A stretch of DNA of 64,000 bases, taken from positions 186,001 to 250,000 of the IMG/VR virus record IMGVR_UViG_3300017971_000185. The stretch is one strand, 5' to 3'. Below are positions 2,099 through 58,915 of the stretch, piece after piece; positions within the stretch are counted from its first letter, which is position 1, and each line of letters begins with the position of its first letter. Position numbers and translations under genes: made by a program. The notes under the pieces were generated by a model that worked only from the letters and a program-made list of their open reading frames with translations, made no database searches and was not told where the DNA came from.

Positions 2099-2925
2099 CG
2101 ACACACGAGGCAGCAGGCGGCACCTACGTCGAGATCTCTCGTGAGGAGTTTGAGGATTGGCTCAACAAGACGGGCTACAAGTGGGAGCGTGATCGATCCA
2201 AGGCCGGAATCTATGTCGTCAAGTTGTCGCCCAACGTAGGTATCCACATCTCATCTTCCATCGGCTCCAGAGACACGGGGCTCGCGAGGGGACGAGCCTC
2301 GGTCAAGATGAAGCTGGTCAGCCTCATCACGGGCTACACGCTCAACAAGAAGGTTCAAGGCCGCGATCACTTCAAGCGTACCAAAGGATGGCGACAGACC
2401 TGGAAGAAGGGTCTGGACGACTTCAAGGGCGCCTACATGAAGGCGAAGGACTGGTACGACAAGCTGGCGACCATCGAGAGCCGGGACGAGTACAAGGACG
2501 AGTGGCTCGGGAAGATCGAGGAGATCGGCGGCTGGGAAACCGATCGGATGCTCAAGGACTTCCACGACAAGCTGGAGAAGGGGAGCGTTCTTTCAGACAA
2601 GCAAGAAGCGGCGATTGAGCGCACCAAAGGACGGGGTGCTGGGCCTGGGAGAGCACCCCAAGAAGCGCCAAATGAGGAGTTGCTTGCCAAGCTGCGGGAG
2701 CTTTGGAAGCGAGCCAAGGCAGCCGCCGATCGCGGGGATCGGGACGGTGAGTGGACGATGGGCTTCGCCCAGAACATGGGCGAGAAGTTGAAGAAGGGGT
2801 GGCGTCTCACGCCCAATGAGAAACGGAAAATCGATGAGAAGCTCAAGAGGTATCGCGTCGCCTCGATGCTCGCGGAAGGTGCGATCCAACGCGTAGCTTC
2901 TCAGTTTCTCGCTAGGAGCCTGTAG
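2095..2925 (+). CDS. Hypothetical protein with C-terminal RVASQFL tag
   Basis: ATG at 2095 overlaps the helicase TGA (ATGA). Lys-rich globular sequence ending AIQRVASQFLARSL. Confidence 0.75.
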   Translation: MTTHEAAGGTYVEISREEFEDWLNKTGYKWERDRSKAGIYVVKLSPNVGIHISSSIGSRDTGLARGRASVKMKLVSLITGYTLNKKVQGRDHFKRTKGWRQTWKKGLDDFKGAYMKAKDWYDKLATIESRDEYKDEWLGKIEEIGGWETDRMLKDFHDKLEKGSVLSDKQEAAIERTKGRGAGPGRAPQEAPNEELLAKLRELWKRAKAAADRGDRDGEWTMGFAQNMGEKLKKGWRLTPNEKRKIDEKLKRYRVASMLAEGAIQRVASQFLARSL

Positions 2926-5273
2926 TGGGAGTCACGACTAGCAGCAACTACCGAGCACTGCTTGAGATCATTGACCTGAGCATCGCCTTGGGCAATGGGA
3001 ACCTGACGGGCGGCAACCATGTCGTGTTCACGTCGGGCGACGAGATGCGCGGTGAGGATCTCATGGGTCCTGGCGCTGCCGGTGCTCTGTTCCTACGGGG
3101 AGGCGATTCGCTGGGAGCGGGAGGCGATGGCGGCGATGTTGCCGTGCGCTTTGGCTCTCCCGATACCACCGGAAACGTAGGCACGATCTACATTGGTGAC
3201 ACGGCTCTGTTGCCTCCGGGTATTCCGGCTGCCGAGATTCCGGGCTCGGTCCTCATTGGTGGGGATACGAGAGTAGCCGATCCGGGTGGCTTGATCTGGG
3301 TCATGGCCGCTGGAGGCAATCCGATGGGGTTGCCTATTGCAGCTCAGGCAGGATCGGTCTGGTGCGAAGCAGGAGGAAGTGTAGGTGCGCTTCCGGGTGG
3401 CCTTTTCTATGCCAGGGGAGGAACAACACCTGTTGGAGCCCCCGTTTCCGGTCTTGGGGGAGTTGAGAATGCTGCCTATCTCCTTGGTGGAGATGCTGAT
3501 AACGATGACGATGCGGGCCAAGTCAACGTACAAGGAGGAGAAAGCAAAGGAACGGCAGGTGATGGGGGTCAGGTCACTGTAGAGGGGGGTCCTATTTTTG
3601 TGGGCGGCAACGTAGGTGGTGTTGGGGGTCCTGTTTATGTACAAGGTGGGGTCAATCTTTCAGGAAGTGGCCAGCCAGGTGGTTTGGTTGATGTAGCAGG
3701 TGGGAATCCTGGCGGAAAGGTCACGATTCAAGGAGGTCCTTCTTCTGTAGCGGTGAGTGGTGGAGATGTGGTTCTTACGCCTGGCGGCGGTGTTGGTGCG
3801 GTTGGTGTAGTTCAGACGACTGATGCAACGTCTGGGCATCAGATGGAGGGCTACTGCACGGTTGGGTCTCTCGCGTCTCCAATAGGGGTGGAAAAGCTAC
3901 GGGTTGTTGGGGATGCGAGAGTCGAAGGTAAGCTCACAGTTACGGGGCTGATTGATCCGACAGGACTTGTTGTTTCGGAGCAGATCGCCAAGCCGTTTGA
4001 TCCGACGGGGACGATTTACGGTGTTTATTGGGTTCAACGGGGAACGCCATGCTTGCCCTACTTCACGGACGATCAAGGCAATGATCACAACTTGCTTGGC
4101 GGTGGTGGTGTAGGCACCTACGATTCTTACCTTGATCAAGGCGCTGGTGCGGATGCAGATCCGATCTTCACGGACATGCCGCCTATCCAGGCGAAGATCG
4201 CAGGGCTTCCCGTACTCTCTGTTGGCTACCCAGCCACCAATACGCTTCATTTTCTCCCTGGCACGAACCTGTCACTCGTTACTCCTTTCATCGGTGCATA
4301 CGCTCTGCCCAACACTGAGATTCGGGGGACTGCGCCCATCGGGCCACTTGGAACAGTGGCCAATGATGCTGCTGTGGTGACGGTTTCCAATGTCGGCTTT
4401 CCGGGAGCTACTTTTGAGGATGTTCGTACGTTTAAAGACGTATGTTTCAGTCATGCGTCCTTTGCGATTGCTCCGACTTTCTTCTTCACGAATTCTCCCT
4501 ACTGCGAGTTTGACAACGTATCGACGCTGATTCCGGCAAATGCAAGTCCCACGGTCGGGATCTGGTATCAGACATTTCCCGGCAAGTTTGAGAGGCTAAG
4601 GATCAACAAGACGATCCTCGGGGGACAGTCTTTCGAGATGGACGGGGGCACACTGGATGTCATCGTAGAAACCGGCAATCAGATCGCAAACAGTGCCTTT
4701 ATTGGAACCGGAAACCTTCGCTTCTTTTTGAAAGGAAGCGGGAATTACATCAGCACTTCGCAAGGTCCCACCCTCGATATCGAGATCGGAGACGGGACTG
4801 TGGGAGTCCCTCCCAAATTCAGCGGAGCCGAGACATTCACGTTTGGTGCGGGCACCCATTCGTGGAATTGGTCGGGAGGGCCCGTACCGCCTGGCACGAC
4901 CGGATACCAACTCTGTCCTGGAGGGGGCATGTTGGTTGGCGATCCGCCCCCTCCCGATCCCGGCGGCGGGGGAACACAGCTTCAAGCGGGCCGAACCGTG
5001 AGAGGTATCGTTCGCGGAATTCACGTTCAGATCGGAGCGAATGTCAGCAACGCGAATTTCAACGTGTGGATCCTCGAAGGCGGTGTCCTGAAGTATCAAG
5101 AGGGTCCGGCCCCGTTCCCCTTCTCTCTTCTTGGATGTGTGGGACTGGGGACATATCTCTCCACGACATTCGCCGAATTGACGGGCACGTTTCCCCTCGC
5201 CGTCTGGATCGTTCCAGCCGCGCTGAGTCAGGGGGACTGGGATCACATCAACGTCTCCTTCTTCGTCAGGTAG
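2925..5273 (+). CDS. Gly-rich virion fibre-like structural protein (782 aa)
   Basis: GTG overlaps the upstream TAG. GGxVxxxGG repeats. Shares GKLTVTGLIDPTG with 14902-19869 and an N-terminal TSSN[YF]RALL motif with 6137-6601. Confidence 0.65.
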   Translation: MGVTTSSNYRALLEIIDLSIALGNGNLTGGNHVVFTSGDEMRGEDLMGPGAAGALFLRGGDSLGAGGDGGDVAVRFGSPDTTGNVGTIYIGDTALLPPGIPAAEIPGSVLIGGDTRVADPGGLIWVMAAGGNPMGLPIAAQAGSVWCEAGGSVGALPGGLFYARGGTTPVGAPVSGLGGVENAAYLLGGDADNDDDAGQVNVQGGESKGTAGDGGQVTVEGGPIFVGGNVGGVGGPVYVQGGVNLSGSGQPGGLVDVAGGNPGGKVTIQGGPSSVAVSGGDVVLTPGGGVGAVGVVQTTDATSGHQMEGYCTVGSLASPIGVEKLRVVGDARVEGKLTVTGLIDPTGLVVSEQIAKPFDPTGTIYGVYWVQRGTPCLPYFTDDQGNDHNLLGGGGVGTYDSYLDQGAGADADPIFTDMPPIQAKIAGLPVLSVGYPATNTLHFLPGTNLSLVTPFIGAYALPNTEIRGTAPIGPLGTVANDAAVVTVSNVGFPGATFEDVRTFKDVCFSHASFAIAPTFFFTNSPYCEFDNVSTLIPANASPTVGIWYQTFPGKFERLRINKTILGGQSFEMDGGTLDVIVETGNQIANSAFIGTGNLRFFLKGSGNYISTSQGPTLDIEIGDGTVGVPPKFSGAETFTFGAGTHSWNWSGGPVPPGTTGYQLCPGGGMLVGDPPPPDPGGGGTQLQAGRTVRGIVRGIHVQIGANVSNANFNVWILEGGVLKYQEGPAPFPFSLLGCVGLGTYLSTTFAELTGTFPLAVWIVPAALSQGDWDHINVSFFVR

Positions 5274-20787: not shown

Positions 20788-20827
20788 GCTAGCCCTCAGT
20801 GAGCCTTCGCGGGCTTTCGGAGAGCCT

Positions 20828-37016: not shown

Positions 37017-37033
37017 GTTCCCCAGGGTGAGCC

Positions 37034-37759
37034 ATGGAACGCGTAGGCATAGGCCCTTACAGGCCCAAGAAGCGCAAGCGGCAGCGTAGGCAGCGGGGAC
37101 AGGCCAAGCAGAAGGCCAAGATGAGCTACCGCAAGCGCAAGGGTGTCCTCAAACAGAAGGCCAAGATTCGCTATCGCCAGGTACGCAAGTCGCCTGCGTT
37201 CAAGCGAAAGAAGCGCATCTACCGGAAATTCCGCACGCGCCACAGGCGGCTCGGGACGACGGAAGAGATTATGATGCATCCGGCCGTCGAGTTTATGATG
37301 ACCCTAGACGGCGAGCGTGTCGTCGCGGGACATATCACGGGAGTCGTTGCTGACACGTGGCAAGTCGAGTACGCACTTGAGGATGGCACGATCGGTTCCA
37401 TGGACATCGATGACTTCCTCGATCAAGCAGCGTTCTTCGATGACGGCGACATCGAGTTGTTGTTTCTGATTCTCGATGAGGCTTCTTCGGTGGAAGACGA
37501 CGGCGATGAGGATGTGACCGTCTTCGAGTTTGAACCTCCCGCTGAGCCATCGGCTGAGAGAGTCGTCTTGGCCTACCAAGAGCGTCACGCCTTCAACAAG
37601 GAGTCTCCGCCCGACTTGCTCGCGCAGCTTGTGAAGGTTCTCGACAAGGCGAGCACTCAGGCTGAAGGCGATGGGCGTAAAGGACTACGAGATGCCGTGG
37701 GTCGAGTCAAGGGCATCGCCAAGATCGTGGACTCCGCCTGGACGCATCGGAGGGAGTAG
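37034..37759 (+). CDS. Bipartite protein: Lys/Arg-rich N-terminus, acidic middle, tag AERVVLAY
   Basis: The first 75 aa are dominated by K/R. The D/E-rich domain follows. Confidence 0.7.
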   Translation: MERVGIGPYRPKKRKRQRRQRGQAKQKAKMSYRKRKGVLKQKAKIRYRQVRKSPAFKRKKRIYRKFRTRHRRLGTTEEIMMHPAVEFMMTLDGERVVAGHITGVVADTWQVEYALEDGTIGSMDIDDFLDQAAFFDDGDIELLFLILDEASSVEDDGDEDVTVFEFEPPAEPSAERVVLAYQERHAFNKESPPDLLAQLVKVLDKASTQAEGDGRKGLRDAVGRVKGIAKIVDSAWTHRRE

Positions 37760-37762
37760 GTT

Positions 37763-38002
37763 GTGGCGCTGCCTGCTGACGTTCGGCGGCTCTTAGCTGA
37801 GGTCGAGCGTCGGCGTCAGGCGAGACTGGAGCGTATTCGCTTCCAGAACAACAACCGTCAGTATGGTCGCTCGATCTACGGAGACTTCACCTACTATCCG
37901 AGTCAGATCGAGCCAGAGCACCATCTCAACCGGGGCATCTTGGGGCTAGACAAGATTCTCAGCGGGGTTACTCCGTGGCCTCGTTTCCCGACAATCCCAT
38001 GA
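37763..38002 (+). CDS. Small hypothetical protein
   Basis: GTG start after GGGAG. Stop overlaps the next ATG. Confidence 0.55.
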   Translation: MALPADVRRLLAEVERRRQARLERIRFQNNNRQYGRSIYGDFTYYPSQIEPEHHLNRGILGLDKILSGVTPWPRFPTIP

Positions 38003-38136
38003 GCGCGAGCGCACAACGAGTTGCTTCCCGATACCTGCAAGATGCTCGTGTGGATCACTACGAGGTCGAGAAGTGGCTTGAGGAGGCTGGGGTGAAACCG
38101 GAAATCGCTGCTCCGTCCAAGACGGACGGCCAATGA
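37999..38136 (+). CDS. 45-aa protein beginning with tag MSASAQRVASRYL
   Basis: Read by eye. ATGA overlaps at both ends. Confidence 0.65.
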   Translation: MSASAQRVASRYLQDARVDHYEVEKWLEEAGVKPEIAAPSKTDGQ

Positions 38137-38384
38137 CGCTGATGGAGCAGGGAAAGAGGGCATCCATGAAGCGAACAGCAATCGTTAAGAAGCATCCCGA
38201 ACGCGGGGTTTGGTGCCTATTCGATTCTGAGGGTAAGAAGGCGCTCAACTGTTTCAAGAATCGGTACAAGGACAAGAAGCCGCCTCAAGAGGCTATCGAG
38301 CGGGCAGAGCGCATCGTGCAATTCTACAAACACCAGGCTAAGGACATGGCGGTTCGGGTCGCAGCGAGATGGCGGGGCGAATGA
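38133..38384 (+). CDS. Small protein with phage head-associated-type motif and C-terminal RVAARW tag
   Basis: IVKK....WCLF...GKK..CF......AxERxVQFYKH resembles a short motif seen in phage head-morphogenesis genes (recalled). Confidence 0.6.
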   Translation: MTLMEQGKRASMKRTAIVKKHPERGVWCLFDSEGKKALNCFKNRYKDKKPPQEAIERAERIVQFYKHQAKDMAVRVAARWRGE

Positions 38385-38810
38385 CGGCGTCAGCACAGCG
38401 CGTGGCACATGCTCATCTTCTCCGCACGGGAGCCAAGGCTCTCAGCGGTAACGCGATTCGGTTGGAAGCAAGACATCAAGAAGGAGGCTGACCAGATCAC
38501 GAGAGAGATTCGCGATGGGTTTGTCAGGAAGAACACGATGAAGCTGAGTGCCATCGTGACCGGGAAAGGCAACCTGAAGAACATCGAAGTCCTGAGTTGG
38601 GCACGTAGCAACTTTGAAGGCGATATGCTGTTCACGTTCAAGGACGGATCGAGTTTCGAGGTACGCAACAAGACCGTGACCAAGATGTCGGTCAAGGGCC
38701 GGTGGTTCTCGCAGTACCCGACGACGTTCCACAAGGTAGTCATGCCGGACGGCAAGAAGATGCCTTCTCCGTCTGAGAAGCGCATGGTCCAGGTATTCGC
38801 GGCAGTGTGA
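38381..38810 (+). pseudogene. Frame-disrupted gene: tag-bearing start in one frame, conserved body in +1 frame
   Basis: ATG 38381 (ATGA overlap) gives MTASAQRVAHAHLLRTGAK, stop at 38491. The +1 frame (38409-38810) carries IRDGFVRKN..KGNLK..FEGD..F.F.DGS.F.V.N..FSQYPTTFH.VV.PDG. Confidence 0.55.
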
Positions 38811-41593
38811 TGGGTCGGCCGAAGTACATCGGGATCTTTCTCACGCCTCAGAGTAGGCGGGCGCTCCTGCGCACCTATCCGCCCGTCCATCCCACTGTCT
38901 ACGCCGATCACGTCACGGTGATCTACGATCCCACCGATGCCGACTTGGAGAAGGTCGAATTGGGAGAGATCGTCACGGTCAAGCCGGTAGCTCATCTGGA
39001 GGACGAAAAGGCCCAGGTGTTGAGGGTGAGCATTCCGTCCTACCTGGCTCGGCTCACCAACCGGGTGCCGCACATCACAATCTCTACGGCTCGCGGTGTT
39101 GCTCCCGTGTATGCGGGCGAGCTAGCCAAGTCGCACCACACCATGATCGCCCCGAAGCCAGGCAACTACACGGGCATCGTGGACGTGGACAAGCGTAGCC
39201 ATCCGGTGCGAACGAGGATGTTCCCGCTGGCCGCTGCTCCCAAGCACTACAAGATCGATCAGGGCGACGTTCGCAAGAAGACGCGCCGTGACAAGAAGCA
39301 GGAGCTAGAGGAGGCGAAAGACCTTGGTTTCTATTCGTACACGGTGATGAAGGTCGTTCCCATCAAGCAGGTCAAGACTCCGCCGGTCTGGAACCAAGGG
39401 CGTATCGACAGGATCAAGAAGGGGCTCGCGTCTGGGAAAGCCTTTCCGCCCATCTCTCTTGCGGGGAAGCGTCCTCCCTATGAGATCAGTGACGGCATCC
39501 ATCGGACCAACGCGAGTATCGACGCTGGCTACACGCACATCCCAGCGTACTTCACGGTGCTCGTAGAGCGCCCCGATCTCTACGAAGAGCCCGAGAAGGA
39601 GAAGCCCAAGCTACGGCCAGGTACTTGGGTCAAGATGCGCGCGTCTCGGGACGGTTTCGATTGGGCGGTTGTGATCGAGTACGTGGGTCCTCGCGTGTGG
39701 AAGGGAGTCAAGCGTCACTTGTACGGTCTCGTAGCGGGCGATACGAACAAGTCCGACTTCATCGGAGACTGGATGGACTCCGAGTTTGATCCCGTGCGGG
39801 AAGGACAAGTACCGAGGAAGGTGCGTGAGACGATTCTGGCAGACCCGTTTGCTGATCATCTTCCGCAGCGACGTGTTGCTGCTCGCCATCTCATCGCTCG
39901 TGACTATTTCGAGATAGGCGACATCATCTTGTACGGGAAGTACAAGAACAAAAAAGCACGGATTGTGGCGTGGGGCAAGGACCACAAGGGAAACCCCACT
40001 GTCGAGATTGAGCCCATCCCCAAGGGCCGCAAGAAGAACAAGACCCTCGGCCTGTTCCGCATCTGGCACGCGCTCCCGCCAGAGGAGCGGAAGAAGGAAG
40101 CGCAGGTTCGGACGGCGGAATTTTCTCCCAATTGGGATTGGCCCAACGTCCTGAAGAATGTGGCCATCTTCAACCAAATCCACAAGACGGTGAAGGGATG
40201 GACGCGCCTGAGCGACAAGGACCGAGTACCGGCGCTCCAGAAAGAAAAGCCGTTCATCGGACAACTGAAGAAGGATGTCGCGGGCGGAACCTTCCCTGGT
40301 CAATGGGAAGCAGGTTTGGCTGAGTGGCTCTATCAGTGGTGGGGATTCGAGTGCCCCAAGAAAGGCACTTCTGATCTGCTTCATCATGAGCTTTCGGTTC
40401 TGTATCGTCATGTTGCCATCGAGCCCAACAACTATTTACTCAAGAAGGATGTCGAAAATACAGCACGAGTGTTAGACACGTACTCCAAGGAGGTCAACGA
40501 CTGTCTCAAGCAAGCCGGGCCAGCGCGTCTGACCTACTCGGGGTTCAAGGTCTGGAATCCGCAGCGCATGCCCGACAAGATGATGCGCAAGCTGTTGAGC
40601 GGCGTCGATCACATCATGGCGATCTTCCGCAAACGAGGGATGGAGAAGGCGCTCACGAAAGGCGTCAAGGACATCCTCGTTCGCAAGTGGACTAGCAACG
40701 ATGGAAAGTATGTTGCCTGGTACTTCTCCCGTGAGCGCCGCATCGTCCTGACCGATGCTGTTCTCAAACCCGGCGGTGGTCGGCTCATGGATCGCTGGAT
40801 CTCCGAAGTGTTCCTCCATGAGTTTGGGCATCATGTCCACATGACGTACCTCCATCCCAACGCTAAGAAGGAATGGGATGCCGGGTGGAGTCCTGTTGAG
40901 TCGGCACGGGAGAAGGTCGAGCAAGAATTCAAGATCACCGGGAAGGACCGAAGGCGGTTCTTCGATCTCATCGAACGGAATGATTGGAGTCCGTCGAAAG
41001 CGGCACGAAAGCTCAAGGGCTTGGACAAGCTACGGTTCATGGCGTGGCTGCGCAACCCTGGTTTGGGAGAGCCCTTGATTACACCTAAGATTGTTCGGTT
41101 GACGCGTCGAGGGAAGGACGTGTTTGATTTCTTGCGGGACCCAGAGGGGCATTGGCGTCAACAACACCCTGGAGACCTGCTCAGTCATCTCCAATATGAG
41201 TCGAAGGAGCAGCAGAGAGCGGAAGAGGATGCTTATGTGGCAAAGCAAGTAGCTCAGAAGCTCCGCCGCCTTCGCAACGATGTTTTGTCTCTCGATTGGG
41301 AAGGCGCAGACAAGATTCCCCGAGCGTTGCAAGACGAGATTCGCAAAGAGGACAAGAGCGTAGACGCTGCGATAGATGCTTTGGAAGTCCCCACGGATTA
41401 TGCGAGAACGAATGAGATGGAGGACTTTGCCGAGTCTTTTGTTGCCTTCGTGGCGAACCCGGCAAAGCTCTCGGACCAGGCCAAGTTCCGCATGCAGCGT
41501 GCTCTCAGCCTCTCCGGGCTCTACGGCAAGCCGATTATGAGGCTGGCTGAGCGGGTCGCTCAGACCTGGCGTCGAAGGCAGGCCGCAGCCTAG
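38807..41593 (+). CDS. Multidomain (polyvalent-type) protein: 2H phosphoesterase + ParB/Srx-like + SH3-like + HExxH zincin metallopeptidase
   Basis: HVT (ADHVTV) and HIT (VPHITI) 2H pair; PPISL..YEISDGIHR; VFLHEFGHHVH plus DYARTNEMEDFAESF. Tags RRVAARHL (internal) and ERVAQTW (C-terminal). Confidence 0.78.
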   Translation: MMGRPKYIGIFLTPQSRRALLRTYPPVHPTVYADHVTVIYDPTDADLEKVELGEIVTVKPVAHLEDEKAQVLRVSIPSYLARLTNRVPHITISTARGVAPVYAGELAKSHHTMIAPKPGNYTGIVDVDKRSHPVRTRMFPLAAAPKHYKIDQGDVRKKTRRDKKQELEEAKDLGFYSYTVMKVVPIKQVKTPPVWNQGRIDRIKKGLASGKAFPPISLAGKRPPYEISDGIHRTNASIDAGYTHIPAYFTVLVERPDLYEEPEKEKPKLRPGTWVKMRASRDGFDWAVVIEYVGPRVWKGVKRHLYGLVAGDTNKSDFIGDWMDSEFDPVREGQVPRKVRETILADPFADHLPQRRVAARHLIARDYFEIGDIILYGKYKNKKARIVAWGKDHKGNPTVEIEPIPKGRKKNKTLGLFRIWHALPPEERKKEAQVRTAEFSPNWDWPNVLKNVAIFNQIHKTVKGWTRLSDKDRVPALQKEKPFIGQLKKDVAGGTFPGQWEAGLAEWLYQWWGFECPKKGTSDLLHHELSVLYRHVAIEPNNYLLKKDVENTARVLDTYSKEVNDCLKQAGPARLTYSGFKVWNPQRMPDKMMRKLLSGVDHIMAIFRKRGMEKALTKGVKDILVRKWTSNDGKYVAWYFSRERRIVLTDAVLKPGGGRLMDRWISEVFLHEFGHHVHMTYLHPNAKKEWDAGWSPVESAREKVEQEFKITGKDRRRFFDLIERNDWSPSKAARKLKGLDKLRFMAWLRNPGLGEPLITPKIVRLTRRGKDVFDFLRDPEGHWRQQHPGDLLSHLQYESKEQQRAEEDAYVAKQVAQKLRRLRNDVLSLDWEGADKIPRALQDEIRKEDKSVDAAIDALEVPTDYARTNEMEDFAESFVAFVANPAKLSDQAKFRMQRALSLSGLYGKPIMRLAERVAQTWRRRQAAA

Positions 41594-41736
41594 CTCTGAG
41601 GCTCTGAGGAGCGTCTCCAGAGGCTTCTGGGCCGCCAGGATGCGGCTGTAGTCTCGGGGCTCTGGAGGCTCAGGGAGGCTCCCAGGGCGTCCTACGGGTT
41701 GCGGGCAACGCGCACCGCGCCGGGCGCGCATTTCGT

Positions 41737-41764
41737 ATGCACTTTTGGTAGATTCTGGCGTAGA
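41737..41764 (+). promoter_or_regulatory. 28-nt phage promoter motif, copy G
   Basis: ATGCACT-TTTGGTA-GATT-CTG-GCGTAGA, 10 nt before ATG 41775. Confidence 0.65.
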
Positions 41765-41774
41765 GGGCGTAGAG

Positions 41775-42914
41775 ATGAAGGTTCTCAAGCTACAGATCTT
41801 CCATGGCAACGAGATGAAGGAATGGCGCACGATCGAGGACGACGTGACCAAGATCGGGACGCTCCAGTCCTCGCACATCCAGCTTGAAGGGCTAGCGCGC
41901 ATGCACGCGGTGATCGAGCGCAGCACGGACACGTTCCGGCTCATCGATCTCGGCGGCGTGCCTCCGACTTTCGTCAATGGCGAGCAGATCAGGCAGGCCG
42001 AGATTCAGAATGGCGACATGATCCACTTCGGTCGAGAGGGTCCGTGGAGTATGCGCGCGACCATCGAGACAGCCGTCGAGGTTGACGTGGACCGCAAGCC
42101 GGAGGCCCCTGACTCTTTGTCACGGGATGAGCTTTTCGAGACTTTCGCCAACGCAGCCCAACGACGCAAGGAGCGAGAGGACAAGGAGGATATTCCAGAC
42201 GATGAGCTTTTTGATCATTACTATCGCAAGTACCAACGTCGTAAGGCTCAGGAGCAAGAGCGCGAGAAGGACTCGGGGCAAGAGAAGTTGTTTGAGAGCC
42301 TGTGCGAACAGATGGAGGAGCTTGTAGAGGAGCGCTCAGAAGACCAGAAGAATGACATTACACGGATGCTTACCCAGGTGAAGTCTCTGTGGAAGAGCAA
42401 GGATCCTGAAAGAAAGCAAGATCAGATCCGACGCCTTGAGGATATTATTCAGGCTCTCAAGCAAGACAGGCAAGAGAAGGAGCAGATGGCGCACGCTTTG
42501 ATCGATGCCACGAGCCAAATCATTGCGGAAGGCACGATGGAAGAGGCGTTCAAGATCTCCGAAGAAGAGGCGCTTGAGAAAGCCGCCGATCTCGTCATGG
42601 AGGTCAGTCAGTACAAGGATGCCCTCGGTCTCCTTCAGGTGTTTTCTGGGCCAAAAGAAGGCGGAGCAGGGGACAAGAAAGTCTTTCTCAAGGGGAAACA
42701 TCTCTTGGAGAAACAATTGTCGGGGGAGGTCGCTAGAAAGAGTCTGTTCTTGAGTCTCTACATCGCGCGGGCAGGCGGCTGGACGTGGGAGCAACAACAA
42801 AAGGAAATGCTGAAAGCGCGGCGTAACCTGACTGAGGAGGAGCTTCAAGTGCTTGAAAACCATCCCGCAGTCAAGAAGGTTTTTGAAGCCATGGAGAGGC
42901 AGAGCGGTAGCTAG
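41775..42914 (+). CDS. FHA-domain protein with acidic coiled-coil C-terminus
   Basis: TKIGTL.SSHIQL..LARMHAVI...LIDLG....TFVNG.....I.NGD.I.FG. Confidence 0.78.
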   Translation: MKVLKLQIFHGNEMKEWRTIEDDVTKIGTLQSSHIQLEGLARMHAVIERSTDTFRLIDLGGVPPTFVNGEQIRQAEIQNGDMIHFGREGPWSMRATIETAVEVDVDRKPEAPDSLSRDELFETFANAAQRRKEREDKEDIPDDELFDHYYRKYQRRKAQEQEREKDSGQEKLFESLCEQMEELVEERSEDQKNDITRMLTQVKSLWKSKDPERKQDQIRRLEDIIQALKQDRQEKEQMAHALIDATSQIIAEGTMEEAFKISEEEALEKAADLVMEVSQYKDALGLLQVFSGPKEGGAGDKKVFLKGKHLLEKQLSGEVARKSLFLSLYIARAGGWTWEQQQKEMLKARRNLTEEELQVLENHPAVKKVFEAMERQSGS

Positions 42915-42938: not shown

Positions 42939-43613
42939 ATGCTGAAGCCGCAGGACATCGTGCATGTAGGAGGGACGCTGACCGCCGCTAGCGTGTTGGC
43001 TGCCTACCACCAAGGAGTGTTTCCTTGGTTCTCGCACGATGGCAGCGACGTGCTTTGGTGGTCGCCAGATCCTCGATTCGTGCTCGACGTGAACGAGGTA
43101 CACAGAGGGCGCACCGTTCGGAAAGCGCTCAAGAAGCTCGACTTCACGATCGACGCTGAGTTTGACCAAGTGATACAGGAGTGTGCCGACAAGCGCTATG
43201 CAGCCAGGTCTGCGATGGGAACCGATCGGACCGACACTTGGATCACTCCCCGGATGTTGAAGGTGTACCGGAAGCTCTATCGAGAAGGCTACGCGCACAG
43301 CGTCGAGGCGTGGAAGGATGGCGATCTAGTAGGTGGTCTTTACGGTCTGTGCCTGGGCAACGTGTTCTTTGGCGAGTCCATGTTTGCGCACATGCCCAAT
43401 GCGTCCAAGGCGGCTCTTGTGTTCCTTTGCGATAAGCTGAAGGAAGCGGGTGTCGGAAGGATCGATTGTCAGATGGAGACTCCGCTGATGCGCTACATGG
43501 GAGCCAAATTTGTCAGTCGGGCGCAGTTTCGAGATGGTCTCTTGTTGGGCTTGCTCACCAAGCCCACGCTCCGAGGAAAGTGGTCTGTAGATGGGTTGCC
43601 AGACGCAGAGTGA
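42939..43613 (+). CDS. aat: Leucyl/phenylalanyl-tRNA--protein transferase
   Basis: LAAYHQGVFPW, WWSPDPR, F.QVI..CA, TWIT, AHSVEAW...LVGGLYG...G.VFFGESMF...NASKAAL, IDCQM.T. Lacks the usual short N-terminal extension. Confidence 0.95.
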   Translation: MLKPQDIVHVGGTLTAASVLAAYHQGVFPWFSHDGSDVLWWSPDPRFVLDVNEVHRGRTVRKALKKLDFTIDAEFDQVIQECADKRYAARSAMGTDRTDTWITPRMLKVYRKLYREGYAHSVEAWKDGDLVGGLYGLCLGNVFFGESMFAHMPNASKAALVFLCDKLKEAGVGRIDCQMETPLMRYMGAKFVSRAQFRDGLLLGLLTKPTLRGKWSVDGLPDAE

Positions 43614-49750: not shown

Positions 49751-50058
49751 TCGTTGTGAAGCTGGAGTTGTGGCCTGGTGGTGACCGCAGCCGGGCCACG
49801 GAGATCGGGCGGACGTACGTCTGGAGAGAACATCTCCATAGCCCCGGCAAGGCTGACTACGAAGTCCGGGTTTGCCGGCGAGGCCATTACGAGGTCGCGT
49901 CGAGAGCGTTTCTCGATAGCAAAGGATTCACGCGCACGGGGCGAGTCGAGAATTGGCCGCGGTTGAGCTACAACGTGTGGCGTCTGATTTGCCGCTGTCT
50001 CAAAGCTGCGTTTCCCGAGGAGAACAAGAAAAGCAATGGCTGTTCTACTTCCCGGTAA
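49747..50058 (+). CDS. Conserved phage hypothetical protein
   Basis: MIVVKLELWPGG...G.V.NWPRLSYNVWRLI.R.L. Confidence 0.65.
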   Translation: MIVVKLELWPGGDRSRATEIGRTYVWREHLHSPGKADYEVRVCRRGHYEVASRAFLDSKGFTRTGRVENWPRLSYNVWRLICRCLKAAFPEENKKSNGCSTSR

Positions 50059-50788
50059 GTTGCTCTACCTAGCTGTCCCTCGCACGGCGTCCGTATCTAC
50101 CGAGACTGCGTTGCTCGCTTTCGAGGGCGCCATCCGTTTGGAAAAGCACATCACCTATGGGCAGGTGAAGGCTGATCCGTCGATCCCGTTCCAAGGCACG
50201 GAAGTGGTCTTCACGACCATTCGCAATCCCTATGACATACTGACGACAGACTTCTACTACGAGGAGGATCGCTACCCGCACTTCCTTACGTTCGTTCGCG
50301 AGTACGAACACTGGCCGTTCGTGGTCCAGGGTAAACTGTTCTGGTTGCTCGATGAGGTCGATGAAGCGTGGAATGCGATCGGGGTAGACTTCGAGGACTT
50401 CTATCAAGGAGAAGGACCTTTCTTCGTGGTTCTACAGTATGAGAACCTGTCGGAAGAATTAGACGCGCTGTTGAGAACCGTAGGGTTACCCACGGTCAAC
50501 CTGCCACGAAAGAACATCTCCAAAGACAAGAAGCCGTGGCGAACCTACTACACGCCGGAGGCAATCGAGGCTGTCAATGAACGTTTCGGGGAGGAGATCA
50601 AGAAGTGGGGGTACGATCTACTCGACCCGGTGCGTAAATCCCGCGGCGACCTGAAACGCTACGTCGTGCCCGTCACACTGGAGATTGATGCGGAATCTCC
50701 CGAGCACGCTCAGGAAGTCTTGGAGGCTCTCCAGCATGTTGGGGTAAGCATTACTGACTGGAGTGAGCCCGAAGAGACGAGACGATGA
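50036..50788 (+). CDS. Sulfotransferase-family protein (Sulfotransfer_2-like)
   Basis: LYLAVPRTASVS (5'-PSB-like), TTIRNPYD (3'-PB-like), YENL.EE...L, W..YYT.E....V..RF. Confidence 0.72.
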   Translation: MAVLLPGKLLYLAVPRTASVSTETALLAFEGAIRLEKHITYGQVKADPSIPFQGTEVVFTTIRNPYDILTTDFYYEEDRYPHFLTFVREYEHWPFVVQGKLFWLLDEVDEAWNAIGVDFEDFYQGEGPFFVVLQYENLSEELDALLRTVGLPTVNLPRKNISKDKKPWRTYYTPEAIEAVNERFGEEIKKWGYDLLDPVRKSRGDLKRYVVPVTLEIDAESPEHAQEVLEALQHVGVSITDWSEPEETRR

Positions 50789-55260: not shown

Positions 55261-55431
55261 ATGGAAGACCACAAAGGCGATGTGTACGATCTTGGGCGCA
55301 AACGCGAACGTGCGGACGTATTGGCGTGGCTACGGAGCGAAAGCGTATTTTCTGACGCGGCCGAGTTTCTCGCGGACAGGATCGCGGAAGGCTGTCATGA
55401 GGGGGCGGCTGCTCGTTTTGAAAAGGACTGA
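55261..55431 (+). CDS. 56-aa hypothetical protein
   Basis: Read by eye. TGATG coupling to the next gene. Confidence 0.5.
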   Translation: MEDHKGDVYDLGRKRERADVLAWLRSESVFSDAAEFLADRIAEGCHEGAAARFEKD

Positions 55432-55751
55432 TGGCGGTCATCCTTCCAGGCAAGTTTCTCTATCTGGCGAACCCGCGGACGGCATCCACGTCCACGCGCA
55501 TCGCTCTTGGCAAGCTGCCAGAAGCCAAGATGCTCTGGCCACAGCATCAACTGCTGCATGAGTGCCATCTGTACGATGGTGAGCAGCCGGTCACTGCTGT
55601 TCGCAATCCCTACGATGTCCTTGCAACGTGGTTCCAGCTTCAAGTGAAGTATGAGGATTTCGTGGAGTTTCTCGCCAAGTTTCAGCACAAGCAGTTTCTC
55701 CTTGGCGATCCACCTGACTTGTTCTGGCAGTGTGGTGAGGGGTTTGGGTAG
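55431..55751 (+). pseudogene. Truncated paralog of the 50036-50788 sulfotransferase-like gene
   Basis: MAVILPGKFLYLANPRTASTST...TAVRNPYDVL matches the paralog but stops at 106 aa. Confidence 0.6.
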
Positions 55752-55943: not shown

Positions 55944-57362
55944 CTACTCAAAGGTAAGCATCGGATTCGAGGCTGTGCCGGTCTCGCCTTGGCGGCGATG
56001 CTCCGGTAGTGAGCCTCCGGCCTGACGGTTCAGGCGCCTTGGTATGAGTCCTGCGGAACTGTCCCGACGACGCCGGTATCGCCCTCGCAGCAACTCCCCC
56101 ACGTCTCGGTGATGATCGTCGAGACCGACCTGTTCGTCCTGAGAACGTCTCAGCAGGTTGATCCCTCCCACCACGTCGGCATGAGAACGTCTACCGCAAC
56201 TGCGGCAGACGAAATCGATTCCTGATCGGTTCCGTCGAGAAACGTAACCACAGGAGGGGCAAGTCTGGGACGTGTACGCCGGGTTCACCTTGATCACCGC
56301 TGCCTTCGTCTCCAAAGAGTGGGCCAAGGCCCGGTAGGCGAACCTCTTCTGTCCCCGACATCCTTGAAGGTCGAGATCTTCGATCACGAACACGGTGCCC
56401 TTCGGCGCATCACGGACCAGCTTGTTCGCCGTCTCTCCCGTGATGGTTTTCACCATCCCGGTGAGCTTCGACTCCAAGCGGTCGAGCCGAGGGCTGTTCT
56501 CCTTGAAACCTTGGCGCTGTCGGTTCGCACGAAGGTTCCTGACGCGTTCGTAGAGCCTGTCGAATTTGGGTTTGAGGTCGGCACCGAACGTTCGGCCGTC
56601 AGACGTGGCCGCCACCACGTTCAGGCCGACATCGACACCGATTTTAGGAGCATCTGGCTGAGGCTCGGGGACGACCCACTCCTTCTTCTCGACAACCTCG
56701 AACCGCCATCGGCCCCGCTTGTCCTTGCGAGCGTGGACTCCCTTCGACACGTCCGAAGAGGACCCGACGTAAGGATTTCCGTTCAGCGGAAGCCAGATGA
56801 CTTTCCGGCTGACCAACGTGGAGATCTTGATCCACATCGGAGCCATCGCAGCTTCGTTGGCGTCGGCCAGCGTGCAGGTGTTCTCCGACATCCGCATGGG
56901 GATACGGTCAGACACTCTCGGCGGGTTCCCGGAGACCTCGGGGTCGAGGAGAAGTTTCCAGTAGGCGTCGATGGCTTCCTGGGTGACATGCTTCCAAGGA
57001 ACGGAGATCAGGTGCTTGCCCACGGTGCAGAGGGCATGTCGCTCATCTTGGGAGATCTGGCCGAACCTATGGAGACGGGTGAGGTGCTTCTTGATGGCAC
57101 GCTCGTAGGTTGCCTTGGCCCAGGTACTTACGATCTGGATGGCGTGGTCTCGTGCGTTCTTCTGGATCTGGGACGTGAGCTTTTCAGCCTTTGGGAAGAA
57201 GGCTTGTTTCTTGGACCGCTTGAGGTTGAGCCTCCGGCCATCGAACATCGCCTGCACGCAAATACGGACGTACTTGACGTACTCCACATGCAGGGCCTCC
57301 AGGGCAGCGACCTTGCCTTGGTTGGTCTCCGGGTGGAGATAGAGGTGGCGTGACTTCTTCAC
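55944..57362 (-). mobile_element. tnpB: Stand-alone TnpB (IS200/IS605/IS607-type RNA-guided nuclease) gene
   Basis: RuvC I GVDVG, RuvC II VIEDL, Zn finger TSQTCPSCG..F.C.SCG, RuvC III HADVVG.IN. No tnpA and no CRISPR array nearby. Opposite strand to the upstream neighbours. Confidence 0.9.
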
Positions 57363-57493
57363 GAAAAACGGTAGTTTAGCATGGAAACGGGCGGTAGGTT
57401 CTCTCAGGAATGCTTAGGTTTACTGGGATTTGGCGTCAACAGTTCGCAACCCCGATACTCCTTCAGCACGGTGACCTTGGGAGTTGCGCTTTT

Positions 57494-58558
57494 CTATTGG
57501 AGAAGAGGCAGGATCTTGTCCCGAGCCTCGGGATGCTCGTAAGCAAGTCGGATGAGAGCCTTCCGCAGACTCCCTTCCTTCTTGAGCTTGCTCTTGTGCT
57601 TCTCCTTGTATTTTTTCTGCTTGTCCTCGGCAAGCGGTTCGCCTTGGAAGTCGGCTTGATAGACACCGGGTTGGGACGCTGCTTCATGGAGCAGATCGTC
57701 CATGTCCATGTCAATCACTACGACTTCCATGGTGCGCTTGGGATCGATTGTGAGCACGGCTGCCCAACGGTGGTGTCCGTCGAGGATGTAGCCGTCGCGT
57801 GAGATCATCACCTTGGGTTCTTCGGTCAGCGCGTTGAATTTGCCTTTGAGATGGGCGTCTGCGATGCCGAAGGTCTTGGCCGCCTTGATCTCTTTCTGCG
57901 TGGCCTTTAGCTCTCCAACACGAACGCGGGATTGCTTCGATCCGGCTCCCGCTTCCTCGAAACGGTCGAGCATCTGACGCATGATGGGGCGGTCGTCATC
58001 GGGATCGGCTCCCGCCTGGACCATCGCCTGACCTTTCTTGCGCTCTAGCTCGTCATCGGAATCGAGCATCTCGCGGACTGACTTGCCGCCTTCGATCTGG
58101 GGCATCTTGTCTCGCGTGAGCCCTTTGTTCTCGACACAGACGGGAGGGCTCATCTTGCAGACATCGGCGCCAGCTTCAATGCCTTCCCTGACTTTCTGGG
58201 CGATCTCGGCAGCCTGGATCGCGTCGTCTCCGACAATCTCCAGGTTGTACTCTTTGATGGCTTCGCGATGCTCTTTCGGCAAGTCCTTGGGTTCCGCAGG
58301 AGGCTTGCCTTTGCGCTTTTCGAGCATCTTCTCGCCTCCTTTGGGGCTCTCCACGGGGATCTTCTCCGTGTCTGCTGGGCCTTTCTTCTCCTCTTTCGGC
58401 TTGCCCTTGGTCTTTTTCTCCGCGACTGTGTGAGCCTTGGGATCGGCGTCGGGGTGCTCCTCAAGATACTTCTTGAGTGCCTTCTCGGTGGGAAACTCCC
58501 CGGCCTCTCGCTCCATTCGAAGAGCGAGCACACGAGCCTGCTGGCGAAGATCGTGCAT
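57494..58558 (-). CDS. ParB/Srx-like domain protein with terminal tags
   Basis: LKATQKEI...VMISRDGYILDGHHRWAA. N-terminal ARVLALRM and C-terminal LRKALIRLAYEHP..R..ILPLL. Confidence 0.7.
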   Translation of the reverse strand: MHDLRQQARVLALRMEREAGEFPTEKALKKYLEEHPDADPKAHTVAEKKTKGKPKEEKKGPADTEKIPVESPKGGEKMLEKRKGKPPAEPKDLPKEHREAIKEYNLEIVGDDAIQAAEIAQKVREGIEAGADVCKMSPPVCVENKGLTRDKMPQIEGGKSVREMLDSDDELERKKGQAMVQAGADPDDDRPIMRQMLDRFEEAGAGSKQSRVRVGELKATQKEIKAAKTFGIADAHLKGKFNALTEEPKVMISRDGYILDGHHRWAAVLTIDPKRTMEVVVIDMDMDDLLHEAASQPGVYQADFQGEPLAEDKQKKYKEKHKSKLKKEGSLRKALIRLAYEHPEARDKILPLLQ

Positions 58559-58915
58559 CTAGCTCAGCTTGCCAATGACGTTTCGGATGCGCTCACGCAA
58601 TTGTCGAAGCTGCCTGAATCCGAAATTCATGTTGGCTGGTGCGCCGTGGGTCATGTCTGTCTCGATTGCGTCCATCAATCGTCCACAAACATCAGCGAGG
58701 ATCATCATCCGCATTCTCGGTTGCTTCGGCATGGCTTGCCGTAGCAGTGGGATGATCTCTTGGATCTGATCCTTGATTTTGTCGCCCGCCGTCTCCTCGG
58801 GTAGCTCCTCTGAGTACCCTTCCTTGATTAGCGGAAGAACCGCGTCCCGAACCTCACCGGGGTTCTCGTGAGCCAGTCGGATCAGGGCTTTGCGTAGTTC
58901 TTGCGAGTCAGCCAT
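58559..58915 (-). CDS. Small protein beginning LRKALIRLAHENP..RDAVLPLI
   Basis: Its TAG directly abuts the in-frame ATG of 57494-58558. Confidence 0.7.
   Translation of the reverse strand: MADSQELRKALIRLAHENPGEVRDAVLPLIKEGYSEELPEETAGDKIKDQIQEIIPLLRQAMPKQPRMRMMILADVCGRLMDAIETDMTHGAPANMNFGFRQLRQLRERIRNVIGKLS

What the first reader, a model, noticed from the sequence alone, without database searches (positions are those of the whole stretch)
2881..58915. A shared helical tag ([RK]V[AVL]xx[YWHF]-like) on many unrelated proteins: candidate virion-loading or processing signal for injected enzymes
Seen: the same short amphipathic motif sits at termini or domain joints of otherwise unrelated proteins. 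Instances: AIQRVASQFLAR (C-term, 2095-2925), PVKVAERALRAK (C-term, HAD phosphatase), SAERVVLAYQERHAF (37034-37759), MSASAQRVASRYLQDAR (N-term, 37999), MAVRVAARWRGE (C-term, 38133-38384), MTASAQRVAHAHLLRTGAK (N-term, 38381), PQRRVAARHLIAR (internal joint) and LAERVAQTW (C-term) in the 928-aa protein, and QARVLALRM (N-term, 58558). It was not noticed in the aat, IF-1, RRM, PNKP or other early-looking genes. Tagged operons at 37034 and 58915 are preceded by the same candidate late promoter as the endolysin and fibre gene. Established: T4 internal proteins use a short capsid-targeting sequence removed by the prohead protease, and phiKZ-like phages package many processed head proteins. Inference: this is a portable packaging or cleavage tag that loads RNA-repair, ParB-like and metallopeptidase enzymes into the head for delivery at infection. 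An Ala often follows within about 10 residues and could be a cleavage site. I do not know of a description of this tag, but cannot check.
Basis: partly seen in the sequence, partly recalled or inferred. Interest (0 to 1): 0.85.

Follow-up and report, generated by a model that had tools for sequence, protein, structure and literature searches.

The report
Portable helical tag on huge-phage enzymes
A short helix-forming peptide (core R-V-A-x-R-aromatic) really is stuck onto the ends and domain joints of many unrelated enzymes in a group of uncultured phages with very large genomes, which makes it look like an address label, but what it binds and whether it loads proteins into the virus particle is not yet shown.

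Summary
The loose regex is weakly enriched (8 vs 3.2). The narrower core R-V-A-x-x-[YWHF] is clearly enriched (5 vs 0.7, plus a sixth copy in a 36-aa ORF).

Of the nine listed instances, four are strong, two are borderline but conserved in homologues, and one is a degenerate copy of a canonical tag. Two are unsupported: the HAD phosphatase and 58540.

The motif is not a local oddity:
- The internal copy in the 928-aa protein abuts a conserved Tudor/KOW-like barrel. The tag-plus-barrel profile hits 393 clusters, almost all from 100-536 kb phage contigs.
- In the 158 best proteins the motif occurs 117 times against 4.7 expected.
- 34 related loci carry 52 tags, while 79 unrelated phage loci (1.3 Mb) carry none.

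Tags sit at N-termini (R usually residue 7), at C-termini or between domains. One family carries the tag at either end or not at all.

Carriers are polyvalent, effector-like enzymes: 2H phosphoesterase, ParB-like, HExxH, topoisomerase IB, CCA-adding enzyme, RNA ligase, ADP-ribosyltransferase and GNAT.

Best reading (confidence about 0.4): a docking or cargo-loading peptide analogous to the T4 capsid targeting sequence. No cleavage site or binding partner was found, and the shared late promoter rests on a weak motif (9 vs 4.1 matches).

The parts
2872..2922 (+). C-terminal tag (…AIQRVASQFLARSL, then stop) of the 281-aa protein encoded at 2080-2925.
   Evidence: The matrix score is 19.6 bits. 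A tag is conserved at the C-terminus of 8 homologues. One homologue (P0171) has it at the N-terminus instead, and 9 have none.
37541..37591 (+). Degenerate internal tag (SAERVVLAYQ) in the 241-aa protein encoded at 37034-37759. It lies at the joint between an acidic middle region and the conserved C-terminal domain. The N-terminal ~70 residues of this protein are extremely basic.
   Evidence: The matrix score is only 7.7 bits. The position aligns with canonical RVAAAH and KVAARF copies in homologues P0188 and P0189.
37999..38049 (+). N-terminal tag (MSASAQRVASRYLQDAR) of a 45-aa ORF at 37999-38136.
   Evidence: This is the strongest copy at 34.2 bits. The ORF looks like the remnant of the N-terminus of a larger multi-domain protein such as L001_456, which carries an N-terminal tag of its own, although tblastn aligns only residues 228-306 of that protein to the window. 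The sequence is identical in independent assemblies.
38337..38381 (+). C-terminal tag (DMAVRVAARWRGE, then stop) of the 83-aa ORF at 38133-38384.
   Evidence: The score is 16.7 bits with the stop codon padded. The ORF matches residues 228-306 of L001_456, where the tag is internal and followed by a further domain and a C-terminal tag.
38381..38431 (+). N-terminal tag (MTASAQRVAHAHLL) of a 36-aa ORF at 38381-38491. The downstream domain (38484-38810) is in another reading frame.
   Evidence: The score is 29.0 bits. In relatives one intact ORF of about 450 aa carries the N-terminal tag and this C-terminal domain together (L001_451; L045). The frame break is present in all assemblies laid on it.
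38810..41593 (+). The 927/928-aa polyvalent-type protein. Its parts in order are a 2H-phosphoesterase-like N-terminus (about 38810-39229), a ParB_N-like region (about 39257-39595), tag plus barrel, a helical region with HEFGH (40817-40831), and a C-terminal tag.
   Evidence: The tRNA_lig_CPD family hits at E=1.2e-3 here, and at 7.7e-7 in homologue P0004, whose N-terminal domain is 60% identical. ParB_N-like status comes from ESM Atlas structure and feature leads, TM 0.58-0.62. Zincin status (ATLF, M90, Mx1) comes from Atlas leads plus the HExxH motif. There are no Pfam or PHROG hits above threshold.
39854..39904 (+). Internal tag (PQRRVAARHLIAR) immediately upstream of the barrel module.
   Evidence: The score is 25.0 bits. 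R355 and A357 are invariant in alignment A3, and A15 and R17 are nearly invariant in alignment A1. AlphaFold2 predicts a helix over residues 346-366.
39908..40072 (+). Conserved ~55-residue Tudor/KOW-like beta-barrel module (…GDIILYGKYKNKK…EPIPKGRKKNK…LFRIW).
   Evidence: It is 60-72% identical to the same module in otherwise unrelated proteins. The profile hits 393 clusters. The AlphaFold2 barrel has pLDDT of about 90. Foldseek's best matches are Tudor, chromo, PWWP and eS4-KOW barrels, all with E of 0.013 or more.
41534..41584 (+). C-terminal tag (MRLAERVAQTWRRRQAAA, then stop) of the 928-aa protein.
   Evidence: The score is 14.0 bits, which is borderline. The position is conserved in P0002 (RVAQAW), P0003 (VAEAYRRR) and P0004 (RVATAYKRR).

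Best explanation
The tag is a portable amphipathic helix of about 15 residues. Its consensus is [L/S]-A-x-R-V-A-[A/S]-R-[Y/F/H/W]-[L/V]-x-A. At N-termini it usually reads M-x5-R-V-A.

A clade of uncultured huge phages (genomes of roughly 100-540 kb) attaches it to the N-terminus, the C-terminus or the inter-domain joints of otherwise unrelated, effector-like enzymes. It most likely works as an address or docking peptide. One face of the helix (V, A, aromatic, L, flanked by two Arg) would bind a common partner, so that many different enzymes are gathered at one place.

The most likely destination is the assembling virion. On that reading, polyvalent and RNA/DNA-repair enzymes are co-packaged and injected with the DNA, as with the T4 capsid targeting sequence or encapsulin and microcompartment cargo peptides.

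Shown here: the motif is real, clade-specific, selected at the protein level, portable between termini, placed outside catalytic domains, and carried by polyvalent-type proteins.

Inferred: that it binds a partner at all, what that partner is, and that the destination is the capsid.
For: Reality and specificity:
- In the 158 best proteins carrying the associated barrel module there are 117 motif hits against 4.7 expected (shuffle maximum 13).
- Matrix hits of 16 bits or more number 122 in real sequences and 0 in reversed or shuffled ones.
- 34 module loci (0.65 Mb) carry 52 tags. 79 unrelated phage loci (1.32 Mb) carry 0.
- 49 of 51 tags lie on the gene strand.
- Codons differ between copies.

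Address-label behaviour:
- 32% of tags lie within the first 12 residues, against 2.9% expected, with R most often at residue 7.
- The 281-aa family has the tag at the C-terminus in 8 members, at the N-terminus in one, and nowhere in 9.
- In every protein with Pfam-mapped domains the tags lie outside the domain envelopes. Examples are a tag between the 2H and CCA-adding domains, and tags just before topoisomerase IB.

Cargo type: 2H phosphoesterase, ParB_N-like, HExxH zincin-like, topoisomerase IB, InPase, RNA ligase, CCA-adding enzyme, HD, GNAT and a DRAT-like ADP-ribosyltransferase. These are the domain classes of polyvalent proteins, which are proposed to be packaged and injected (PMC5512222).

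Against: - There is no direct evidence of packaging.
- No capsid, scaffold, portal or protease gene was recognisable near tagged genes in the window or in a relative.
- The genes most often neighbouring the module are topoisomerase IB and the CCA-adding enzyme, not structural genes.
- Tags abut the next domain with very short linkers. In the module alignment they run straight into the first strand with 13-16 residue spacing, so they could be structural.
- In the module set, C-terminal tags are no more frequent than a uniform distribution would give (8 observed against about 6 expected).
- Tags also occur beside a UvrD-like helicase, which is not an obvious virion cargo.
Confidence: 0.4

Rival explanations
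1. Docking helix. The tags bind each other, or bind the Tudor/KOW-like barrel that so often follows them. This would form a multivalent network holding split and fused effector enzymes together as one complex or condensate. It need not have anything to do with the capsid.
For: - About half of all tags directly precede the barrel.
- The barrel's fold class (Tudor, chromo, PWWP) typically reads Arg/Lys-containing peptides (plus general knowledge).
- Many proteins carry 2-3 tags.
- A C-terminal tag of one ORF is directly followed by the N-terminal tag of the next: window 38355/38399, and L036 9939/10001.
- Fused and split versions of the same units occur in relatives.
- The module, topoisomerase IB and the CCA-adding enzyme form a conserved neighbourhood.
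Against: - No contact information could be obtained. AlphaFold2 gave only a moderately confident helix (pLDDT about 72) next to the barrel.
- The spacing between tag and barrel varies by 3 residues, which argues against one fixed cis interface.
- Near-invariance of R, V, A and R across lineages more than 50% divergent is unusual for simple helix-helix zippers.
Confidence: 0.25
2. Processing signal. The tag marks the sites where a protease cuts polyproteins into units or removes a propeptide. The protease would be the HExxH domain of the same proteins or a prohead protease.
For: - Tags lie at domain joints of polyvalent proteins.
- Several carriers have HExxH regions.
- Zincin-mediated processing of polyvalent proteins has been proposed, with P1 DdrB as the example (PMC5512222).
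- Met is about twice as frequent as expected 3-9 residues upstream of internal tags (20 against 10.4). Each tag therefore looks like the start of a unit.
Against: - No conserved residue outside the helix could serve as a scissile site.
- Tags at the very ends of small single-domain proteins (3-8 residues from the C-terminus, or residue 7 from the N-terminus) leave nothing useful to cut off.
- Proteases usually read extended strands rather than four-turn amphipathic helices.
- Most small tagged proteins have no peptidase domain.
Confidence: 0.1
3. Passive structural element. The helix is simply the N-terminal cap or linker of an ancestral unit and was carried along as domains were shuffled. It has no binding function of its own.
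For: - Short linkers join the tag to the following domain, and the predicted helix is continuous with the barrel.
- The deletion derivatives in the window retain tags at their break points. The window's RVAARWRGE resembles the C-terminal tag of L001_456 rather than its internal one, which is consistent with a tag-to-tag deletion.
Against: - The same helix precedes at least 8 unrelated folds, and in one family it occurs at the opposite terminus.
- R, V, A, R and the aromatic residue are nearly invariant while flanks and codons diverge, which needs direct selection.
- A passive linker would not be absent from 1.3 Mb of other phage DNA yet occur 52 times in 0.65 Mb.
Confidence: 0.1
4. Host-directed short linear motif. 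The tag binds a conserved host factor such as a chaperone, protease adaptor or RNA. Alternatively it is a pro-N-degron whose cleavage exposes Arg for the phage's own Leu/Phe-tRNA protein transferase.
For: - The window encodes a clear Aat (PF03588, E=1.3e-62) 1.3 kb downstream of the tagged 928-aa protein.
- Arg is a secondary destabilising N-terminal residue in bacteria (general knowledge).
- N-terminal Arg-plus-aromatic helices can bind RNA, as in the lambda N arginine-rich motif (general knowledge).
Against: - Aat was found in only one other viral contig, and that contig is not among the 38 contigs that carry the tag module.
- The syntenic relative L001 shows no Aat family hit among its called genes.
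- Only two Arg residues is few for an RNA-binding arginine-rich peptide.
- No cleavage site was found.
Confidence: 0.1

Closest known systems
T4 capsid targeting sequence (CTS) of internal proteins
   Same: It is a short conserved peptide shared by otherwise unrelated, fast-evolving anti-host proteins of one phage. It is N-terminal in most cases, and it is the only feature those proteins have in common (PMC3012670).
   Different: No sequence resemblance is evident, though this is judged from memory of the T4 CTS. The tag here also occurs internally and at C-termini, often 2-3 times per protein. No protease site is attached to it. Packaging has not been shown. It is spread over a whole clade of huge phages rather than one genus.
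Encapsulin cargo-loading peptides and bacterial microcompartment encapsulation peptides
   Same: These are short portable peptides, helical in the microcompartment case. They can sit at either terminus of unrelated cargo enzymes and dock them to a protein shell, which for encapsulins is an HK97-fold shell (10.1101/2021.03.18.436031 and general knowledge).
   Different: The consensus sequence is different. No shell gene was found next to the cargo genes. The tag here is much more strictly conserved than microcompartment peptides, and it also lies between domains of long polyproteins.
Polyvalent proteins of phages and conjugative elements (Iyer, Burroughs, Anand, de Souza, Aravind 2017)
   Same: Many disparate enzymatic domains sit in one polypeptide: 2H, ParB-like, zincin-like, GNAT, ADP-ribosyltransferase, Pol-beta nucleotidyltransferase and InPase. 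The architectures are mosaic, and delivery with the DNA is proposed (PMC5512222).
   Different: That work links packaging to MuF or portal fusions and processing to zincin peptidases. Word searches of its main text for KOW, SH3, linker, amphipathic and related terms found no description of a recurrent helical tag or of the Tudor/KOW-like barrel. The proteins here lack MuF or portal domains by Pfam.
Docking domains of modular polyketide and non-ribosomal peptide synthases (general knowledge)
   Same: Short terminal helices at the C-terminus of one protein and the N-terminus of the next hold separately encoded modules together. Fused and split versions coexist.
   Different: Those come in matched, specific pairs. 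Here a single consensus is used everywhere, and no pairing has been shown.

Membership tests
Polyvalent proteins (PMC5512222) | Two or more domains of disparate biochemical activity in a single polypeptide. | tested here: met
   In the window's 928-aa protein the calls are weak: 2H-like at E=1.2e-3, ParB_N-like and zincin-like only as Atlas leads. In tagged relatives they are clear: topoisomerase IB with InPase, RNA ligase and a carboxypeptidase; 2H with a CCA-adding enzyme; GNAT with an Ntn-hydrolase.
Polyvalent proteins (PMC5512222) | Zincin-like metallopeptidase domain, a common but not obligatory theme. | tested here: inconclusive
   An HEFGH motif is present, with HExxH conserved in P0002-P0004, P0006, P0008 and P0011. 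Atlas feature scores are 0.92-0.93 to ATLF, M90 and Mx1 clusters. P0004 hits ATLF at E=0.006. There is no Pfam hit above threshold and no PDB sequence hit.
Polyvalent proteins (PMC5512222) | Encoded by a phage of the portal-terminase class, next to late or virion genes, and delivered into the host. | tested here: inconclusive
   The genome is an IMG/VR viral contig of 497 kb, with an amidase endolysin 1.7 kb upstream of the tagged operon. No portal, terminase, capsid or tail gene was recognised in the window or in L004. Delivery cannot be tested with these tools.
T4-type capsid targeting sequence | A short conserved peptide shared by otherwise unrelated proteins of one genome. | tested here: met
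   There are at least 7 copies in 6 ORFs of the window, plus 2 more in the 10 kb upstream. The carriers are unrelated to one another outside the tag.
T4-type capsid targeting sequence | Strictly N-terminal, and removed by the prohead protease at a defined site. | tested here: not met
   Only 32% of tags are N-terminal. The rest are internal or C-terminal. No conserved cleavage motif follows the helix. No prohead protease was identified.
T4-type capsid targeting sequence | Sufficient to direct a foreign protein into the capsid. | not testable with these tools
   This needs a cultivable host or a heterologous assembly system.
Encapsulin / microcompartment cargo peptides | A portable terminal peptide that works at either terminus of unrelated cargo. 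| tested here: met
   In the 281-aa family, 8 members carry a C-terminal tag, 1 an N-terminal tag and 9 none.
Encapsulin / microcompartment cargo peptides | A shell protein encoded with the cargo, and a demonstrated peptide-shell contact. | tested here: inconclusive
   No shell or capsid gene was recognisable in the 84 kb examined. The contact cannot be tested here.
KOW/Tudor-like SH3 barrels (the module after the tag) | A five-stranded small beta-barrel fold. | tested here: inconclusive
   The AlphaFold2 barrel has pLDDT of about 90 and shows four predicted strands plus a short bridge. The best Foldseek matches are Tudor, chromo, PWWP and eS4-KOW barrels, but with E of 0.013 or more and TM 0.4-0.5. 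The Atlas's nearest cluster is named 'putative KOW domain-containing' at score 0.89. There is no Pfam hit.

The most novel reading that the evidence does not exclude
The tag and the barrel may form a reader-ligand pair. The Tudor/KOW-like barrel would read the Arg/aromatic helix. Because proteins carry one to three tags and often one barrel, dozens of repair and anti-defence enzymes would be cross-linked into one multivalent assembly, an 'effector body'. That assembly would be packaged and injected as a unit by huge phages. It would be a protein-sorting code for phage virions that can be read directly from sequence.
Probability: 0.12. Interest if true: 0.9.

Novelty: new variant of a known kind. 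Interest (0 to 1): 0.68.

Why it matters
Huge phages encode hundreds of proteins of unknown role. Nobody can currently tell from sequence which ones travel in the particle or act together.

A strictly conserved, portable tag would give a sequence-readable list of one functional set of proteins across a whole uncultured clade. It marks topoisomerase IB, tRNA-repair enzymes, ParB-like and zincin-like domains, an ADP-ribosyltransferase and acetyltransferases.

If it is a loading or docking signal, it becomes a handle for:
- predicting injected anti-defence arsenals;
- finding the receptor;
- loading foreign proteins into large capsids.

If it is not, it is still a rare case of a short linear motif conserved across many folds in viruses of bacteria.

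Tried and rejected
- **Pfam and PHROG on the tagged proteins and their neighbours:** almost no hits, so no structural or late-gene context could be established.
- **Cultured phages:** megablast of the locus and tblastn of tag plus module against INPHARED found nothing.
- **AlphaFold2 of the full 927-aa protein:** with a 7-sequence alignment the mean pLDDT was 40, which is unusable. It was not used and not searched against structure libraries.
- **PDB sequence searches:** searches with the module profile, the ParB-like part and the HExxH part gave nothing meaningful.
- **Aat link (pro-N-degron idea):** Aat homologues were found only in this genome and in one contig that does not carry the tag module, so the idea was set aside.
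- **Late promoter:** the shared upstream word SCTATGGR has 9 matches against 4.1 expected, and most are not upstream of genes. It was not pursued.
- **HAD phosphatase instance:** no homologues outside this phage were found, so the weak C-terminal match could not be checked.
- **DNA-repeat explanation:** rejected because codons differ between copies.
- **Assembly error as the cause of the short ORFs and frame break at 37999-38810:** rejected because contigs from four runs show no differences.
- **Bacterial genomes:** only 3 loci, all MAG contigs, carry the module. A cellular origin is therefore unlikely.
- **My first codon-usage gene caller:** it was poor, so a simple longest-ORF set was used for the statistics.

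Full report
**What the window is**

The 64-kb window is 56-64% G+C and has no tRNA genes. It matches the IMG/VR viral contig IMGVR_UViG_3300017971_000185 (497 kb) at 99-100% at every gene-centred locus compared, which places it at about positions 186,001-250,000. No cultured phage resembles it.

The same sequence, with no differences over 37000-42000, is present in contigs assembled from sediment (2018) and seawater (2021) metagenome runs.

Recognisable genes in the window:
- the C-terminal third of an intein-bearing UvrD-like helicase;
- three giant ORFs of 2543, 1655 and 1505 aa, the last with Laminin_G_3;
- a HAD/PNK-like phosphatase;
- an amidase endolysin;
- an FHA protein;
- a Leu/Phe-tRNA protein transferase;
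- a PNKP-like kinase-phosphatase;
- a TnpB-like gene.

**Checking the observation**

The loose regex is only weakly enriched: 8 against 3.2 expected. The core RVAxx[YWHF] gives 5 against 0.7, with no shuffle out of 300 reaching 5.

I built a position weight matrix from copies of the motif in proteins from other contigs. It separates the window's instances cleanly:
- 38017 scores 34 bits.
- 38399 scores 29 bits.
- 39872 scores 25 bits.
- 2890 scores 19.6 bits.
- 38355 scores 16.7 bits and 41552 scores 14.0 bits. These are borderline against a six-frame noise ceiling of 14.6.

The two borderline copies are conserved at the same positions in homologues. The weak copy at 37550 aligns with canonical copies in distant homologues. 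The HAD C-terminus and the 58540 peptide are not tags by any test I could apply. Codon third positions differ between copies, so selection acts on the peptide and not on the DNA.

**The motif is a clade-wide feature**

Homologues of the 928-aa protein share a ~65-residue stretch at 60-72% identity inside otherwise unrelated proteins. The stretch consists of the tag followed by a small basic barrel.

A profile of tag plus barrel finds 393 clusters among 1.84 billion representatives. In the 158 best proteins the motif R[VI]Axx[YWHF] occurs 117 times against 4.7 expected. 72 of those copies are not adjacent to the barrel.

In IMG/VR the module occurs in 38 loci, mostly on contigs of 100-536 kb. 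In 185,579 species genomes it occurs only on three MAG contigs.

The cleanest control compares locus sets. Thirty-four module loci (0.65 Mb, six frames) hold 52 tags of 16 bits or more. Seventy-nine unrelated phage loci fetched by chance (1.32 Mb) hold none. Reversed or shuffled proteins also give none.

**Anatomy of the tag**

The consensus is hydrophobic (L/S) at -3, A at -2, R0, V+1, A+2, A/S+3, R+4, Y/F/H/W+5, L/V+6 and A at +7/+8. This gives a hydrophobic stripe every 3-4 residues with two Arg on one flank. AlphaFold2 predicts a helix at pLDDT of about 72 leading into a confident barrel at pLDDT of about 90. The barrel resembles Tudor, chromo, PWWP and KOW folds only weakly.

Position of the 122 tags in the module-bearing set:
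- 32% are within the first 12 residues, against 2.9% expected. R is at residue 7 in 17 cases.
- 8 lie at the very C-terminus.
- The rest are internal.

Met is about twice as frequent as expected 3-9 residues upstream of internal tags (20 against 10.4). Some 'internal' tags are therefore probably former or real N-termini of fused units.

Wherever Pfam domains could be mapped, tags lie outside them and just upstream of the next unit:
- between 2H and the CCA-adding head domain (L016, L020);
- before topoisomerase IB (P0009, L031, L004, L016);
- before DUF5661 and InPase (L031);
- at the N-terminus of GNAT, Ntn-hydrolase and ADP-ribosyltransferase proteins.

**Portability**

The 281-aa family (window 2080-2925) is the clearest case. 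Eight homologues end in a tag. One (P0171) lacks the C-terminal tag and starts with MGTPTDRIAARYL instead. Nine have no tag at all.

The P0003 homologue of the 928-aa protein places a tag in front of the 2H domain where another domain has been added upstream. In the window's version a ParB-like insertion sits between 2H and the tag.

**The short ORFs at 37999-38810**

The syntenic relative L001 has two intact proteins in this position. One is 456 aa, with an N-terminal, an internal and a C-terminal tag. The other is 451 aa, with an N-terminal tag.

The window keeps only four pieces:
- a 45-aa ORF carrying the N-terminal tag;
- an 83-aa ORF ending in a tag;
- a 36-aa ORF carrying an N-terminal tag;
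- an out-of-frame C-terminal domain.

A closer relative, L045, still has the long upstream ORF. The breaks are real, because four runs show no differences across them. Whether these mini-ORFs are still used is unknown.

**What the carriers are**

For the window's 928-aa protein the domain calls are tentative:
- 2H-like, at E=1.2e-3 here and 7.7e-7 in homologue P0004, whose N-terminal domain is 60% identical;
- ParB_N-like, from Atlas structure leads with TM of about 0.6;
- zincin-like, from the HEFGH motif and Atlas leads.

Tagged relatives carry clear topoisomerase IB, InPase, RNA ligase, carboxypeptidase, CCA-adding enzyme, HD, GNAT, Ntn-hydrolase and DRAT-like ADP-ribosyltransferase domains. 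This is the repertoire of polyvalent proteins, which are proposed to be delivered with phage DNA (PMC5512222). Word searches of that paper's main text found no mention of the tag or the barrel.

Ten kilobases upstream of the window, two more small ORFs with N-terminal tags precede the UvrD-like helicase.

**Mechanism**

The data show a positively selected, portable helix that labels a defined set of proteins. I could not identify its partner.

Structural genes were not recognisable near the tags. The conserved neighbours of the module are topoisomerase IB and the CCA-adding enzyme. Aat is not conserved with the tags. No cleavage motif accompanies the helix. The full-length structure prediction failed.

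By analogy with the T4 capsid targeting sequence (PMC3012670) and with encapsulin and microcompartment cargo peptides, and given the cargo type, I rank a docking or cargo-loading role first, at about 0.4. The alternatives are:
- a tag-tag or tag-barrel docking network, about 0.25;
- a processing signal, about 0.1;
- a passive linker, about 0.1;
- a host-directed motif, about 0.1.

**Verdict**

The instance list needs trimming: two of nine are wrong and one is degenerate. The core is narrower than the regex. The cleavage-site and promoter claims are unsupported, and virion loading remains a hypothesis.

Noticed in passing
window 42939-43613 (+): The phage encodes a Leu/Phe-tRNA protein transferase (Aat; PF03588, E=1.3e-62). 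This is an N-end-rule enzyme and is unusual in a phage. A scan of IMG/VR viral contigs, which finds close relatives only, found it only in this genome and in one contig that does not carry the tag module.
   Followed up: partly
window 55944-57362 (-): A TnpB / IS605 OrfB-like gene (Cas12f1-like TNB domain plus OrfB_IS605) sits inside the huge-phage genome. It heads the only minus-strand block of the window, 55944-58915.
   Followed up: no
L052 6971-12016 (window 83-2098 is its C-terminal 671 aa): The UvrD-like helicase is a 1681-aa ORF. It carries an intein with a LAGLIDADG domain at about residues 376-764, ahead of the aligned part of the UvrD helicase domain at 765-1198. By eye the insert follows the Walker A sequence GAGSGK.
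   Followed up: partly
L052 6202-6438 and 6438-6968 (10 kb upstream of the window, same genome): Two further small ORFs carry N-terminal tags (MPPSAKRLAERFL, and MDLRSMARKVASRY) immediately upstream of the helicase. Tagged genes therefore also cluster around the helicase.
   Followed up: partly
window 37999-38810: Two multi-domain tagged genes of relatives are reduced here to 45-aa, 83-aa and 36-aa ORFs plus an out-of-frame C-terminal domain. The break points lie at tags, which suggests tag-to-tag deletions. The breaks are identical in four independent runs.
   Followed up: yes
window 37034-37243: The first ~70 residues of the 241-aa protein are extremely basic and protamine-like (runs of K and R). 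This region is conserved in homologues. It could be a DNA-condensing or internal protein.
   Followed up: no
window 34148-34155, 20781-20788, 58931-58938(-): The word SCTATGGR lies 25-50 bases upstream of the endolysin gene, the 1505-aa gene and the minus-strand operon. Overall there are only 9 matches against 4.1 expected, and the 37034 operon has a variant (CCTATCTG).
   Followed up: partly
window 25357-25623 and 25635-25904; 50036-50788 and 55431-55751: These are pairs of apparent paralogues with near-identical N-termini: MAHTQFEKDM with MAFTNFEKQM, and MAVLLPGKLLYLAVPRTAS with MAVILPGKFLYLANPRTAS. Function is unknown.
   Followed up: no
L016 6105-9986: In a relative, a tagged protein combining 2H and a CCA-adding enzyme carries a LAGLIDADG intein inside the nucleotidyltransferase.
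   Followed up: no
L034, L035, L040, L041 (genes just downstream of the giant tagged proteins): An unannotated 200-320-aa family is conserved in 12 module loci. It contains a tag-like stretch (…PER[IV]AxDFxxRCD…) inside a conserved domain.
   Followed up: no
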